From Octopus sinensis (lineage: Eukaryota), in contig NC_043017.1 of NCBI RefSeq assembly GCF_006345805.1, positions 6,014,001 through 6,078,000 of the forward strand: DNA of 64,000 nucleotides, in the 5' to 3' direction. Positions 51,278 through 57,088 of this stretch are shown piece after piece. Each line of letters starts with the position of its first letter. Positions within the stretch are counted from its first letter, which is position 1. The translations under genes were made by a program, and so were the position numbers. The notes under the pieces are model-generated. The model was not told where the DNA came from. It searched no databases and was given only the letters and a program-made list of their open reading frames with translations.

Positions 51278-51291
51278 GTTGCCATGGTTAC
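51278..51291. promoter_or_regulatory. RFX X-box
   Basis: GTTGCCATGGTTAC (reverse GTAACCATGGCAAC) fits GTNRCC-AT-RGYAAC. Confidence 0.55.
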
Positions 51292-51548
51292 TGGACTAGA
51301 GTGAGACAATGCGAGCTTAGAGACTAGTTAATGGGAGATACTGTGTGTGTGTGTGTGTGTGTGTGAGAAGGAGAGATACGGGGGGAGAGAGGAGAGAGAG
51401 ACAGATGGAGACAGACAGACAGACAGACAAGGAAAACGATTGGTTAAATGGGAGGAAGAATACGAAGTCGGATCAGAGTCAATGAAAGAAAGTCTGAGAG
51501 AGAAGGAAGGAGGGAATGATATATATATGTGTGTGTGTGTGTGTGTGT

Positions 51549-51706
51549 AGGTGTGGCTGTGTGGTTCGTAGCTTGCTTACGAACCACATGGTTCCGGGTT
51601 CAGTCCCACTGCGTGCCACCTTGGGCAAGTGTCCTCTATTATAGCCTCGGGCCGACCAAAGCCTTGTGACTGGATTTGGTTGACGCAAACTGAAAGAAGC
51701 CCGTCG

Positions 51707-51739
<33 letters not shown>

Positions 51740-51908
51740 TTCTCCCCGCAACATCGCTTGACAACAGATGCTGGTGTGTTTACGTCCCCGTAACTTAGCG
51801 GTTCGGCAAAAGAGACCGATAGAATAAGTAGTAGGCTTACAAAGAATAAGTCCTGGGGTCGATTTGCTCGATCGACTGAAGGCGGTGCTCCAAATAAACA
51901 AGTAAAAG
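51549..51908 (+). mobile_element. SINE family A
   Basis: Near-consensus copy. Confidence 0.92.
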
Positions 51909-51911
51909 AGC

Positions 51912-51965
<54 letters not shown>

Positions 51966-51975
51966 GGGGGAGAGA

Positions 51976-52345
51976 GAGACGTAATGGCTCAGTAGTTAGG
52001 GCAGCGGACTCGAGGTTTCGATTCCCAGACCGGGCGTTGAGAGTGTTCATTGAGCGGAAACACCTAAAGCTCCACGAGGCCCCGGCAGGCGGAGGGGAGG
52101 GGGCGAACCCTGCTGTACTCTTCACCACAACTTTCTCTCACTCTTTCTTCCTGTTTCTGTTGTACCTGTATTTCAAAGGGGCCAGTCTTGTCACACTCTG
52201 TGTCTCGATGAATCTCCTCGAGAACTACATTAAGGGTACACGTGTCTGTGGAGTGCTCAGCCACTTGCACGTTAATTTCACGAGCAGCTTGTTCTGTTGA
52301 TCGGATCAAGTGGAACCCTCGTCGTCGTAACCGACGGAGTATCAC
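51976..52345 (+). mobile_element. SINE family D with tail Z
   Basis: First ~200 bp homologous to 21858-22162; different tail (AAGGGTACACGTGTCTGTGGAGTGCTCAGCCAC...CCGACGGAGT). Confidence 0.85.
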
Positions 52346-52369
52346 GTAGATATGTATATATTATTACCT

Positions 52370-52660
52370 TCGACAGCGGCCATGCTGGGGAACCGCCTCG
52401 AAGAATTTTTCTCCCGGTCTCCTTGGGGAACTGCTAAGTTAGTGGACGTAAGCACACCAACACCGATTGTCAAGCAGTAGTGGGGCAAACACACAACACA
52501 AAGATATACACACACACATATGCATATACGACAGGCTTTTTCAGTTTCCGTCTACGAAATTCACTCACAAGGCTTTGATAGGCCCAAGGTGCCTTTCAGT
52601 GGGACTGAACCTGGAACCATGTGGTTGGGAATCAAACCTCTTACAACATAGCCTGTGCCT
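52370..52660 (-). mobile_element. SINE family A, internally deleted
   Basis: GCGGCCATGCTGGGG tail; TTCAGTTTCCGTCTAC; GGGACTGAACC. Confidence 0.75.
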
Positions 52661-52671
52661 ATATATATATA

Positions 52672-52998
52672 TGAAACTCGACTCCGTCGGTGCACCTAAG
52701 AGGTTCCCCTCAGGAGTACAAGTCTGGGCAGAAAGTTGCCCTCACCGGCGAACACACAATCTGTAGAAGACCAGCAGTCGCCCATGCATACCAGCCTCCC
52801 CTCTCCACGCCACTGATGTTATCCAAGGGAAAGGCAAAGGGGCCGATACAGCTTGGCACCTGTGACGTCGCAACTCATTTCTACAGCTCAGTGAACTGGA
52901 GCAACGTGAAATAAAGTGTCTTGCTCAAGAACTCAATACGCAGTGGTTAGAGCATCGAGCTTACGATCGTAAGCTCGATGCTCTAACCACTGAGTCAT
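52672..52998 (-). mobile_element. SINE family C whose B-box region is replaced by an inverted copy of its 5' end
   Basis: Perfect 52-bp palindrome at 52941-52992. Confidence 0.88.
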
Positions 52999-53313
52999 GC
53001 TCTTTCATAACATAACACAACACACAACAAACACACACACACACACACAGATATATAATATATATATATATGTAATAAAATAGAACATATGCATATATAT
53101 AAACATATATGTACGTAACTACCTCTACATGTACATATACACGCATATATGGTGTACAGGACACCAAAAAGACATCGAACACATAGAGAGACGAAACACA
53201 CATAGACACAAACAAGGAACAAGACAAGCCAAAAAAAAGAGAGAGATACAGGACAATAGACACAACGAAAAAACCCTTCTTCAGTCGCTAAGATTTCATC
53301 TATATATATATAT

Positions 53314-53358
<45 letters not shown>

Positions 53359-54037
53359 GCACAGACAGTAAAAGTACAAAAAGTAATTAAAGAGATATAA
53401 ACGAAAATTTGCCCTGCATCAGCCTTTTTACAAAAGATTTGTAGTTTCAACATCTTGAAATAGAACTGCTACTTTAGTAGAGTCAACGACCTACAGAATA
53501 CTGTTTTTCAGACAACTGATACAGTGAAGACAAGACAAGATAAAAAAAAAATGACGAAACATATTGGTGGACTTTTAGTGACTGAGAGAGAAAAGAAAAG
53601 CAAGGACAAAGAAAAGGGACGGTTAAGGAAGAAATAAAAAGAACAAAGGTCTATAAACGATGAAATTAAAGAATATGTCTCTTCGATTTTGGGTTTTTTT
53701 GTGTTTTTTTTGTATGGCTAAAAGGATATAACACCAAACAACATGATACAATAGCGCAACAAGTACGATGCGGAAATGCAAAATGAAATAAAATTTAAAA
53801 AATCGCGGCTGGATGTTAGAACGATGTCCTCAAGTAAATAATGGCGAGTAAAAAAAAAAAGATAGAAGCGTTCGCTTGATGAGTTGAGAAGTAAAGAGAG
53901 AGACTCGTAGCTGCAGCGGAAACAGGAAGTAGCAAGCTGGAATCGAAAGGAAGCAGAATGGTTAGACAGATAGAAAACAACAAAGCGGAGATGAAGAAGG
54001 AAGGTGGGGGGAAAAGAGTGAGCAGGGCAGCATCGCT

Positions 54038-54178: not shown

Positions 54179-54264
<86 letters not shown>

Positions 54265-54559
54265 CTTTTCATACATATATGTGCGTATGAGTATATAAAA
54301 ATATGTATATATATGTGTATGTATATATATGTGTGTATGTGTATTTATATATATATATGTGTGTATGTATATATATATATATATATATATGTGTATGTAT
54401 ATTTTTGTATATATATATGTGTGTGTATATATATATATGTGTGTGTGTGTGTGTTGTGTGTATGAATACATATATGTATGCACATATATACATGTATGTC
54501 TGTCTGTATGTATGTGTGTGGTGTATATATCTATATACACACACACACACACACGCACG

Positions 54560-54600
<41 letters not shown>

Positions 54601-54605
54601 CACAC

Positions 54606-54659
<54 letters not shown>

Positions 54660-54724
54660 ATAAAAAACAAGTCAAAAATAGAAAATGCTAAATATATATA
54701 TATATATCGATTGATTTATGATTA

Positions 54725-54890
54725 TTGCTGTCCGATGATTAAAACTGACTCGTTCAACCCCAAAACACTCCAATCGTGACATCTCCTTATTATATACATA
54801 ATATCTAGGAATTCATCATCTAATATATAACTGGTTTATTAGAAACAGCAGAGCGTGATTCAAAAGATCTTTGACTGCTATTTCTAACAC
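54725..54890 (-). mobile_element. SINE family F, decayed
   Basis: CTCCAATCGTGACATC...TTTGACTGCTATTTCTAAC. Confidence 0.45.
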
Positions 54891-55922
54891 ACCGGCTTTT
54901 TCGTTCCTAGATGTGTTGTCATTTATGATAAAGTCTGTTTGTCTGTATTAGGAGCAATGTGTGTATGTGTCTTAGTGTTCTGAGAGTGTGTTTGCGTTCT
55001 TTTAGTGTGTGTGTGTGTGTGTGTGTGTGTATTGTTGTGTGTGGGTGCTTGTATGCGTGTTTGTGTTTTATTATGTGTATGTGTTTGTGACTTTTGTGTG
55101 TGTGTTGTGTTGTTGTTGTTATGTATATGCGTGTGTGTTTGTGTGTGTATGTATGTATTTGGTTATATGTATGTGTGTGTGTTTGTGTGTACGTGATGTG
55201 TGTGAGTGCGTGTGTATATTTTTGAGTATATACGTATGTGTGTATGTGTGTTGTTTTTGTGTCTCTGCGTTTAGGTATCTAAGTGTATGTGTGTATATAT
55301 GTGTGTGTATACGTAGGTTTGTTTCAGTGTGTGTGTGTGTGTGTGTATGTTTGTCTATGTCTCCGTGTATGTGTGTGAGTGTGTATATATATATATATAT
55401 ATATAACGGTATGTGTTTGTGTGTGAGCGTTTTCTTAAGTGTTTATATGTACATATGCTATGTGTGTTTTGTGTGTATGTGTGTATAAGCACTTGTATGA
55501 ATAAGTCTATATGATGTAATGTGTGAATGAGAGTGTGTGTATGTGTGTGTGTGATGTTTGGGTGAATGTGTGATGATATTTACTAGTGTATATGTGTATG
55601 TTTGTGTGTGTGTGTGCGTGTGTGCGTGCGTGTACAAATGTACGTATGTATGTAAGTATTTATGTGTGTGTCTGTGCGATGGTATGTGTGTGTGTGTGTG
55701 TGTGTGTGTGTTGTGTGTGTGTGTGTGTGTAGTTGAGTATAGTTATTTACGTATGTGTGTATGTGATGGCATCTATATGTGTATATATGCTCGTGTGTCT
55801 ACGTGCAAACGTATATATGTGTGTGTATTAATATGTGTGTAAATGTGACTGTGATGTCATGTATGTGTGTATATGTGTGGTGTGTCTGTGTAGTGATTTG
55901 TACATATGTTTGTGTGTAGTTA

Positions 55923-55956
<34 letters not shown>

Positions 55957-56023
55957 ATAATCCCATAATGCATGCAGGTAGTATGAAACCATGGTCATAG
56001 GAACCTAATTAAATAAACTGCAC

Positions 56024-56037
56024 ATCACCATGGCAAC
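56024..56037. promoter_or_regulatory. RFX X-box
   Basis: ATCACCATGGCAAC, one mismatch. Confidence 0.4.
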
Positions 56038-56154
56038 CACTCCTAACTTCCACCGTTTTTCCATATCCACCACAACCTTCACACCCCTGCAGCGAAATAA
56101 ACTCCGCTTCATTTGACATTACAGAGATTGAGGAAAATATTGTTACATTCCTTT

Positions 56155-57000
56155 AAATGATGATGATGATGATGATGGCGGTAGTGGTTGTGGTGGTGGC
56201 GGCGATGGTTGTGAAGGTGGTATTGGTGGTGGTGGTGGTTATGTTAGTGGTAGTGATGATGGGGGTAATGATGATGGTGGTGGCGGCGATGGTCGTGAAG
56301 GGGTATTGGTAGTGGTGGTATTGGTAGTGGTGGTGGTGGTTGTGATGGTAACGTTACTGTTGATGGCGATGGTGGTGTTGGCTGTGATTGAAGTTGGTGT
56401 TGGTGTTATGTTGATGATGGTGATGGTGGTGGTGGTGGCGGTGTTGTTATCATTGACCATCATCATCTACCATCATCGGCGCCACCGTTACCATGGTCAT
56501 CGGCAGCACCATCACCATTACTATCATCATAGCCACCAGAACCACCAGCACCCCCGTCACCGCCGCCACCATGACCATCACCATCGTCACACCTGCAACC
56601 AGCACTACTACTACCACTACCATCACCACAATCGCCACCTTGATCACCATCACCACCATCACTACTGCCACACTGCTTCACCACTTTCGCCACCACCACC
56701 ATCACCACCACCACTTTCACCATCACCATTATCATCACCACCACTATCTACGAGACCACCACCATCACGACCACCGCTTTCACATAATCATCATCATCGC
56801 CACCACCACCACTTTCACCGACAATCACTACCATCTACACCACTATCACCGCCACCACCATCACCATCACCACCATCACCACCACCACCACCATCATCGC
56901 CACCACCATCACCACCACTACCACCATTACCACTTCTACCGCCACCGCCATTACTACCGCCACCATCACCTTCCCCTCCACCACCACCACCACCATCCCT
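56155..57000. repeat. Trinucleotide block that switches strand at ~56455 ((GGT/GAT)n then (CAC/CAT)n)
   Basis: Direct reading. Confidence 0.85.
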
Positions 57001-57074
57001 AACATCACTGTTAGGGGCATGTACAAACCCCCAATCTATCACTTAACCCTCGACTTTCTACAGTGAATTTACTT

Positions 57075-57088
57075 GTTGTCATAGCAAC
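57075..57088. promoter_or_regulatory. RFX X-box
   Basis: GTTGTCATAGCAAC, a near-palindromic X-box. Confidence 0.55.

What the first reader, a model, noticed from the sequence alone, without database searches (positions are those of the whole stretch)
51278..57088. Cluster of four RFX X-boxes in 5.8 kb, each in a small island of unique sequence
GTTGCCATGGTTAC (51278), GTTACCATGGCAAT (54038), ATCACCATGGCAAC (56024) and GTTGTCATAGCAAC (57075) are full 14-bp X-boxes with 0-1 mismatches. None lies inside a recognised repeat, and I saw only half-sites elsewhere in the window. RFX X-boxes are established regulators of ciliary and ciliated sensory-neuron genes. The cluster suggests a multi-site RFX regulatory region scattered through microsatellite DNA.
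Basis: partly seen in the sequence, partly recalled or inferred. Interest (0 to 1): 0.72.

Follow-up and report, generated by a model that had tools for sequence, protein, structure and literature searches.

The report
Cluster of four RFX X-box motifs
Four near-perfect binding motifs for RFX, the regulator of cilia genes, lie within 5.8 kb of repeat-rich, gene-free octopus DNA; that is far more than chance predicts, but nothing here shows that the cell uses them.

Summary
Each lies in non-repeated DNA between microsatellites and SINEs.

A loose consensus count makes the window look ordinary: 6 sites against 3-4 expected. A matrix built from 30 experimentally validated nematode X-boxes gives a different picture:
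- The four sites are the four best scores in all 64 kb (17.6-20.3 bits), in the middle of the range of validated sites.
- Site 2 is identical to a validated X-box, and the other three are one base from one.
- Markov models and 10,000 decoy motifs run on the real sequence expect about 0.07 such sites per 64 kb.
- One of 6,000 column-permuted decoys and none of 4,000 palindrome-keeping decoys gave a cluster of four.
- The flanks of the four sites are unrelated, so they are not copies of a repeat.

So the motif cluster is real and not compositional. What it does is open:
- I found no gene, exon, RNA gene, CpG island or partner motif in the window.
- Conservation, chromatin state and the true genome-wide background could not be tested.

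Best reading: distal DNA bound by RFX, confidence 0.4. Main rival: a rare coincidence picked out by the scan. It is a modest lead of a known kind.

The parts
51278..51291 (-). X-box site 1: GTTGCCATGGTTAC, read as GTAACCATGGCAAC on the minus strand
   Evidence: Exact match to GTNRCCNNRGYAAC. Scores 20.3 bits, the best in the window. One base from the validated bbs-2 and bbs-8 X-boxes. Lies in non-repeat DNA between a GGT-rich tract and a (GT)n run.
54038..54051 (+). X-box site 2: GTTACCATGGCAAT
   Evidence: Identical to the validated C. elegans ZK328.7 X-box. Scores 17.7 bits. Lies at the right end of a roughly 790-bp non-repeat island, 53355-54148.
56024..56037 (+). X-box site 3: ATCACCATGGCAAC
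   Evidence: Scores 19.5 bits. One base from the che-11 X-box ATCTCCATGGCAAC. Caveat: its right flank is C-rich and G-poor (C 0.43, G 0.07), like the nearby ACC-type array. A weak second match, ATGGTCATAGGAAC at 55991 (7.7 bits), lies 33 bp upstream.
57075..57088 (+). X-box site 4: GTTGTCATAGCAAC
   Evidence: Scores 17.6 bits. Exact match to the nematode consensus GTHNYYATRRNAAC. On the reverse strand it is one base from the xbx-2 X-box. Lies in the 260-bp island between the ACC-type and GGT-type arrays.
56339..56352 (+). Weak X-box-like word GTTGTGATGGTAAC inside the GGT-type microsatellite
   Evidence: Scores 14.8 bits. It lies inside tandem array 56176-56349 and its continuation, so it is probably a by-product of the repeat.
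56487..56500 (-). Weak X-box-like word GTTACCATGGTCAT at the switch from the GGT-type to the ACC-type array
   Evidence: One mismatch to the consensus on the minus strand. Scores 12.7 bits. Lies inside tandem array 56473-56518. The strand composition switches at about 56460.
51545..53000 (.). Block of SINE and other interspersed-repeat copies that separates site 1 from site 2
   Evidence: Self-BLAST finds many copies elsewhere in the window at 70-86% identity. The same families occur in Octopus bimaculoides locus L001.
56160..57000 (.). Inverted pair of triplet-repeat arrays between sites 3 and 4: GGT/GAT type, then ACC/ATC type
   Evidence: Tandem-repeat rows. G fraction is 0.40-0.53 up to about 56460, then C fraction is 0.38-0.60.

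Best explanation
This is a cluster of four independent, high-quality binding sites for RFX transcription factors. The sites are embedded in about 1.5 kb of old non-repeat DNA that SINE insertions and microsatellite growth have stretched to 5.8 kb.

Proposed mechanism (inferred, not shown):
- Dimers of an octopus RFX1/2/3-type factor bind each imperfect palindrome through their winged-helix domains, one monomer per half-site.
- Several sites together raise occupancy and keep the region accessible.
- The region acts as a distal enhancer or silencer for a gene outside this window, not as a promoter X-box of the nematode or fly kind.

Shown here: the motif quality, the excess over chance, and the independence of the four sites. 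Inferred: binding in vivo, regulatory activity, and any link to cilia.
For: **Motif quality**
- The four sites are the four best scores in 64 kb with a matrix built from 30 validated X-boxes.
- They rank in the middle of leave-one-out scores of the validated sites. They also stay on top with a palindromised matrix.
- Site 2 equals a validated site, and sites 1, 3 and 4 are one base from one.
- All four have the AT spacer that 27 of the 30 validated 14-bp sites have.

**Excess over chance**
- Order 0-5 Markov models, whether trained on the window or on the region alone, expect 0.004-0.04 sites in 5.8 kb.
- Decoy motifs on the real sequence average 0.07 hits per 64 kb. One of 6,000 column-permuted decoys and none of 4,000 palindrome-preserving decoys reached a cluster of four.
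- Half-sites alone are not enriched in the region, so the excess is specific to the full paired motif.

**Independence of the sites**
- The flanks are unrelated and there are no transposon hallmarks.
- A truly repeat-borne cluster looks different: in L005, three identical words sit in identical flanks.

**Background knowledge**
- RFX DNA-contact residues are conserved in all known RFX proteins (PMC2873420).
- Fewer than a third of mouse RFX ChIP peaks lie in promoters, so distal RFX sites are normal (PMC7498320).
Against: - No gene, exon, RNA gene or CpG island was found near any site.
- No co-motif is shared between the four flanks.
- Validated invertebrate X-boxes are promoter-proximal, within 500 bp of the ATG in C. 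elegans.
- In Drosophila, unconserved X-boxes occur as often at control genes as at targets.
- As far as I know, clusters of several RFX sites spread over kilobases are not an established class.
- X-box-like words are also somewhat over-represented outside the cluster. Two sites lie within one base of a validated X-box where 0.25 are expected, and 4 sites score 14 bits or more where 0.5-1.1 are expected. The true genomic background may therefore be several times the model value.
- The right flank of site 3 looks like decayed ACC-type microsatellite.
- The score threshold was set after seeing the data.
Confidence: 0.4

Rival explanations
1. Coincidence plus ascertainment. The four motifs arose neutrally. 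The cluster was noticed only because a scan of many windows, by a reader who knows many motifs, will now and then meet a rare arrangement.
For: - With the loose consensus the window total is ordinary (8 matches against 5.1 expected), and about 1% of shuffles give 4 or more sites in 5.8 kb.
- The background outside the cluster looks 3-8 times higher than the Markov value.
- Pooling the rest of the window with 117 kb of other cephalopod-like loci gives one site of 17.5 bits or more per roughly 175 kb.
- At the upper 95% bound of that rate, my own Poisson arithmetic gives about 4e-5 per 5.8 kb. That is tens of such clusters in a genome of about 2.7 Gb.
- No independent sign of function was found.
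Against: - At the best estimate of the background (one site per 175 kb), the same arithmetic gives about 5e-8 per 5.8 kb, well under one cluster per genome.
- Only 1 of 10,000 decoy motifs of equal information content clustered like this in the same sequence.
- All four sites have the AT spacer and fall in the middle of the validated score range.
Confidence: 0.3
2. Relics of duplicated or mobile DNA. The four palindromes descend from one element, such as a transposon, a local tandem duplication or a satellite unit that carried an X-box-like word. The flanks have since diverged or been overwritten by microsatellites.
For: - Repeat-borne clusters of X-box-like words do exist in such genomes. L005 carries GTTTCCAGGACAAC three times at spacings of about 6 and 8 kb inside identical repeat copies.
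- The region is saturated with SINEs and microsatellites.
- Families with no second copy in this window could not be recognised, because no cephalopod repeat library or genome was available.
Against: - The four 14-mers are four different words.
- Their 100-bp flanks show no alignment above shuffled controls in either orientation.
- No 7- or 8-mer is shared by three or more flanks, and the single shared 6-mer is fewer than in controls.
- There are no terminal inverted or direct repeats and no other copy in the window.
- If only the 14 bp survived while everything else decayed, that would itself imply selection on the motif.
Confidence: 0.12
3. The CCATGG-centred palindromes are a mutational or structural by-product of the neighbouring inverted triplet-repeat arrays (GGT type against ACC type), for example through hairpin or template-switch events. 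Alternatively, they are targets of some other palindrome-binding protein.
For: - CCATGG is enriched in the region: 5 of the 11 copies in the window.
- The weak sites at 56339 and 56487 do lie inside these arrays, and 56487 sits at the strand switch.
- Sites 3 and 4 border strand-asymmetric tracts.
Against: - An order-5 model trained on the region itself still expects only 0.04 sites.
- Palindrome-preserving decoys of the same composition average 0.0065 hits in the region, so there is no general excess of palindromes.
- Site 2 lies in ordinary non-repeat DNA, far from any triplet array.
- The polarity of site 4 (GT-rich half, then AC-rich half) is opposite to that of its flanks.
Confidence: 0.06

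Closest known systems
Promoter X-boxes of DAF-19/RFX target genes in C. elegans (bbs, che, osm, xbx genes; PMC3245922 Table 1)
   Same: The same 14-bp imperfect palindrome with an AT spacer. Site 2 is letter-for-letter the ZK328.7 X-box, and sites 1, 3 and 4 are one base from the bbs-2/bbs-8, che-11 and xbx-2 X-boxes.
   Different: The validated sites lie within 500 bp upstream of a start codon, usually one per gene. Here there are four sites 1-2.8 kb apart with no detectable gene within 64 kb.
Genes with several X-boxes: C. elegans F25B4.2, human MAP1A, and yeast RNR2/3/4 under the yeast RFX factor (as reviewed in PMC3245922)
   Same: More than one RFX site acts on one target. Strong and weak sites are combined, and some sites activate while others repress.
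   Different: Those sites lie tens to a few hundred bp apart within a promoter or first exon. They are not spread over kilobases of repeat-rich DNA.
Distal RFX-bound sites in vertebrates (RFX1/2/3 ChIP-seq in mouse ependymal cells, and the Xenopus RFX2 looping model as described in PMC7498320)
   Same: Full palindromic X-boxes that lie far from promoters. Fewer than a third of the peaks are promoter-proximal.
   Different: Occupancy is measured there and not here. I know of no report that four strong sites per 6 kb is a usual arrangement.
Repeat-borne copies of X-box-like words (control found here: L005)
   Same: Several strong-looking matches lie within a few kilobases.
   Different: In L005 the word and 50 bp on each side are identical or nearly so in all three copies. 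In the window the words differ and the flanks are unrelated.

Membership tests
RFX X-box (RFX-binding cis-element) | Imperfect palindrome matching GTNRCC N(0-3) RGYAAC or the nematode form GTHNYYATRRNAAC | tested here: met
   Site 1 is exact and sites 2-4 have one mismatch to the first consensus. Sites 1 and 4 match the second exactly.
RFX X-box (RFX-binding cis-element) | Score within the range of experimentally validated X-boxes | tested here: met
   The sites score 17.6-20.3 bits. Leave-one-out scores of the validated sites have a 10th percentile of 16.7 and a median of 17.9. The four sites rank above 14-22 of the 30 validated sites.
RFX X-box (RFX-binding cis-element) | Occurrence above the background expectation | tested here: met
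   Four sites observed where 0.004-0.04 are expected in 5.8 kb. One of 10,000 decoy motifs clustered likewise. The genome-wide background itself was not measurable.
RFX X-box (RFX-binding cis-element) | Position close to the start of a target gene: within 500 bp of the ATG in C. elegans, searched within 1-3 kb in Drosophila | tested here: inconclusive
   No Pfam domain. No homologue for the reading frames over the four sites or for 41 other non-repeat reading frames. No Rfam family apart from one tRNA 49 kb away. Exons shorter than 45 codons and non-coding transcripts would have been missed.
RFX X-box (RFX-binding cis-element) | Conservation of the motif at the orthologous position in related species | not testable with these tools
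   No cephalopod genome can be searched by DNA. Routes through reading frames found nothing, and an exact scan of metagenomes found nothing.
RFX X-box (RFX-binding cis-element) | RFX occupancy, or dependence of expression on RFX or on the motif | not testable with these tools
   This needs EMSA, ChIP or CUT&Tag, ATAC or reporter assays. The literature searches returned no paper on RFX sites in cephalopods.
Homotypic transcription-factor site cluster (enhancer-type module) | Several independent sites for one factor within a few kb, beyond chance | tested here: met
   Independence of the sites rests.
Homotypic transcription-factor site cluster (enhancer-type module) | Partner motifs shared between the sites | tested here: not met
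   No 7- or 8-mer is shared by three or more of the four 200-bp flanks, and the single shared 6-mer is fewer than in control segments.
Copies of an interspersed or tandem repeat | Homologous flanks around the repeated word | tested here: not met
   Self-BLAST found nothing. Flank alignments were no better than shuffles. No shared k-mers. No terminal repeats. Positive control in L005.

The most novel reading that the evidence does not exclude
The four sites are the surviving core of an RFX-dependent distal control region. Selection has preserved the X-boxes as islands while SINEs and microsatellites inflated the DNA between them. The region would drive a gene outside the window in ciliated sensory, neural or germ cells. 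To my knowledge this would be the first distal RFX module with several sites described in a mollusc. It would also show how cephalopod regulatory DNA survives extreme repeat expansion.
Probability: 0.25. Interest if true: 0.55.

Novelty: new member of a known kind. Interest (0 to 1): 0.35.

Why it matters
If the sites are used, they give a concrete and cheap entry point into RFX-controlled gene regulation in cephalopods. My literature searches returned nothing on this topic. They would also show functional motifs persisting as small islands in microsatellite-swamped DNA.

If the sites are not used, the case is a useful caution. A motif cluster can beat every composition-based null in its own window and still need the genome-wide background and conservation before it means anything.

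Tried and rejected
1. **Loose consensus counts.** These made the finding look like chance. I rejected them as the main test, because allowing one mismatch admits far more words than real X-boxes use.
2. **Compositional origin.** Half-sites are not enriched. Local order-5 models expect 0.04 sites. Palindrome-preserving decoys are not enriched.
3. **Repeat origin.** Self-BLAST, flank alignment, shared k-mers and terminal repeats were all negative.
4. **Promoter at site 2.** ETS-like and YY1-like strings and an ATG lie 19 bp downstream of site 2. The reading frame runs straight into microsatellite, has no splice donor and has no homologue, so I dropped the idea.
5. **CpG island.** There is none. 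CpG observed/expected is 0.83 across the whole window.
6. **Non-coding RNA.** All sub-threshold Rfam hits are microsatellite look-alikes.
7. **Finding a gene.** Pfam on 10 reading frames found nothing. Chimeric protein searches with the frames over the sites and with 41 non-repeat frames found nothing.
8. **Finding orthologous DNA.** Exact look-ups of reading frames and a metagenome scan were empty.
9. **Sampling the background.** I fetched one O. bimaculoides locus and five loci from unidentified ENA assemblies that share a transposon-like protein with the window. That is only 117 kb, too little to fix the genomic rate.

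
Full report
**What is there**

The four strings are at exactly the stated positions: GTTGCCATGGTTAC (51278), GTTACCATGGCAAT (54038), ATCACCATGGCAAC (56024) and GTTGTCATAGCAAC (57075). Against the classical consensus GTNRCCNNRGYAAC, site 1 is exact on the minus strand and the others have one mismatch each. Sites 1 and 4 also match the nematode consensus GTHNYYATRRNAAC exactly.

None of the sites overlaps a tandem array or has another copy in the window. The DNA between them consists of:
- a block of SINE and other interspersed copies (51545-53000);
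- long GT, TA and CT microsatellites;
- an inverted pair of triplet arrays, GGT type then ACC type, at 56160-57000.

Only about 1.5 kb of the 5.8 kb is non-repeat sequence.

The window is octopus DNA. Its SINEs match a locus of Octopus bimaculoides chromosome CM046608.1 at 83-85% identity. A degraded transposon at 45.4-47.7 kb has its best named relative in that species.

**Is it more than chance?**

The answer depends on the yardstick.

*Loose yardstick.* With the consensus and up to one mismatch, the window holds 6 sites. Five of these are in the cluster, including one in a microsatellite at 56487. Dinucleotide shuffles expect 3-4.3 sites. The total is ordinary, and 4 or more sites within 5.8 kb occurs in about 1% of shuffles.

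*Strict yardstick.* The loose test admits far more words than real X-boxes use. I therefore built a weight matrix from the 30 validated 14-bp C. elegans X-boxes in Table 1 of PMC3245922.
- The four sites are the four highest scores in the whole window: 20.3, 19.5, 17.7 and 17.6 bits.
- They sit in the middle of the leave-one-out scores of the validated sites (10th percentile 16.7, median 17.9). They stay on top with a palindromised matrix.
- Without any matrix: site 2 is identical to the ZK328.7 X-box, and sites 1, 3 and 4 are one base from the bbs-2/bbs-8, che-11 and xbx-2 X-boxes.
- All four carry the AT spacer that 27 of the 30 validated sites have.

*Expectations under null models.*
- Markov models of order 0 to 5, trained on the window, on the region alone or on the rest of the window, expect 0.05-0.45 sites of 17.5 bits or more per 64 kb. 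That is 0.004-0.04 sites in 5.8 kb, and the Poisson probability of four is 1e-11 to 1e-7.
- Decoys run on the real sequence avoid model assumptions. 6,000 column-permuted versions of the matrix averaged 0.075 hits per window, and one reached a cluster of four.
- 4,000 decoys that keep the palindromic symmetry gave no cluster of four at 17.5 bits and 6 at 16 bits. They averaged 0.0065 hits in this region.
- Half-sites alone are not enriched in the region, so the excess lies in the paired motif.

*Caveats.*
- I chose the threshold after seeing the scores.
- Outside the cluster, X-box-like words are mildly over-represented. Four sites score 14 bits or more where 0.5-1.1 are expected, and two lie within one base of a validated site where 0.25 are expected.
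- In 117 kb from six other loci (one O. bimaculoides, five ENA assemblies of unknown but related origin) there was one site of 17.5 bits or more.
- Pooled, that is one site per roughly 175 kb, three to five times the model rate.
- My own arithmetic gives about 5e-8 per 5.8 kb at that rate. That is well under one chance cluster in a genome of about 2.7 Gb.
- At the upper 95% bound of the rate it gives about 4e-5, which is tens of clusters per genome.
- The genome-wide background is therefore the decisive unknown.

**Are the four sites copies of one thing?**

No evidence says so.
- The four words differ.
- Their 100-bp flanks align no better than shuffles in either orientation.
- No 7- or 8-mer is shared by three flanks.
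- There are no terminal repeats.
- The islands have no second copy in the window.

A useful contrast turned up by accident. Locus L005 carries GTTTCCAGGACAAC three times, spaced about 6 and 8 kb apart, each inside flanks that are identical or differ by one base. That is what a repeat-borne cluster looks like, and the window does not look like it.

**Context**

I found nothing that points to a target gene.
- Ten long reading frames have no Pfam domain.
- The frames that cover the four sites have no homologue among 5.8 billion proteins, and neither do 41 other non-repeat frames from across the window.
- Rfam finds only a tRNA-Ser at 2478-2559. All its sub-threshold hits near the cluster are microsatellite look-alikes.
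- There is no CpG island.
- The ATG 19 bp downstream of site 2 opens a frame that runs into a microsatellite with no splice donor.

Short exons and non-coding transcripts would have escaped these tests.

**How it most likely works**

The nine DNA-contacting residues of the RFX domain are conserved in all known RFX proteins (PMC2873420). Binding of an octopus RFX to these 14-mers in vitro is therefore a safe inference.

Whether they are occupied and active in vivo is not shown. The promoter model of nematodes and flies does not fit. Validated nematode sites lie within 500 bp of the ATG, and in Drosophila an unconserved X-box is no more frequent at targets than at control genes. The vertebrate picture fits better, since fewer than a third of RFX ChIP peaks in mouse ependymal cells are promoter-proximal.

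My best reading is a distal module bound by RFX at several sites, whose non-repeat core has been pulled apart by repeats (confidence 0.4). The rivals are:
- a rare coincidence surfaced by the scan (0.3);
- relics of a duplicated or mobile element (0.12);
- a by-product of the inverted triplet arrays, or a site for another factor (0.06).

The remaining probability covers explanations I have not thought of.

**Comparison with what is known**

As sequences, these are members of the X-box class. They pass the consensus, score and excess tests. The position test is inconclusive, and conservation and occupancy are untested.

Several X-boxes acting on one gene is known, for example F25B4.2, MAP1A and the yeast RNR genes. 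Those cases span tens to hundreds of base pairs, not kilobases. The kind is known, and the arrangement is at most an unusual member of it.

**Verdict**

Three ordinary analyses would settle it: a genome-wide scan with the same matrix, alignment to other octopus genomes, and a look at accessibility data. Interest is modest at 0.35.

Noticed in passing
window 26719-26732; 40517-40530 and 40781-40794; 12868-12881: Further X-box-like words lie outside the cluster. GTCTCCTTGACAAC scores 17.2 bits and is one base from the xbx-5 X-box. GTTTCTATAGAGAC and TTTGCTATGGAAAC lie 264 bp apart and score about 14 bits each. GCATTCATGGCAAC scores 14.1 bits. Together they slightly exceed expectation. This may mean a raised genomic background, or a wider domain rich in RFX sites.
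   Followed up: partly
window 60254-60640 and 61522-61880: Two diverged direct repeats of about 350-390 bp (76-78% identity) lie about 1,250 bp apart. Each holds a pair of CTGATTGG (inverted CCAAT-box) motifs, and these are the only four copies of that word on the plus strand of the window. The second repeat is followed by ATGGCGATG and a good splice-donor-like GTAAGG at about 61860. This could be a promoter about 4.8 kb downstream of site 4, or the two LTRs of an old small retroelement.
   Followed up: partly
window 2478-2559 (minus strand): A tRNA-Ser (anticodon AGA) is called by both Rfam (55.8 bits) and ARAGORN. It lies next to SINE-like sequence. It was not determined whether it is a working tRNA gene.
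   Followed up: no
window 49216-50889: A large minisatellite: 36.6 copies of a 46-bp AT/AC-rich unit at 87% identity, immediately upstream of the X-box cluster.
   Followed up: no
window 45457-47920: Degraded transposon reading frames. The best relatives are unnamed ENA proteins and the Octopus bimaculoides uncharacterized protein LOC128248506 (36-39% identity). A 60-residue piece on the minus strand is 75-78% identical to proteins P0013 and P0014. P0013 has a weak zf-RVT match, and both are encoded next to reverse-transcriptase genes in loci L002 and L003.
   Followed up: partly
window 43832-43931: A run of 100 N, which is an assembly gap.
   Followed up: no
window 56160-57000, and 57384-57433 against 59103-59152: GGT-type and ACC-type triplet arrays sit in inverted orientation, with the strand switch at about 56460. 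These are long imperfect palindromes that could form hairpins. A second inverted pair of the same kind lies 1.7 kb apart.
   Followed up: partly
L005 1850, 8027, 16094 (ENA ERZ25067557): The X-box-like word GTTTCCAGGACAAC (15.8 bits, one base from a validated site) recurs three times inside copies of one repeat whose flanks are identical or differ by one base. This is an example of a repeat family spreading RFX-like motifs.
   Followed up: partly
L004 7837 (ENA ERZ25066847): A single strong X-box, GTTGCTATGGCTAC (18.4 bits), lies in unrelated control DNA. It was the only site of 17.5 bits or more in the 117 kb of background sampled.
   Followed up: no
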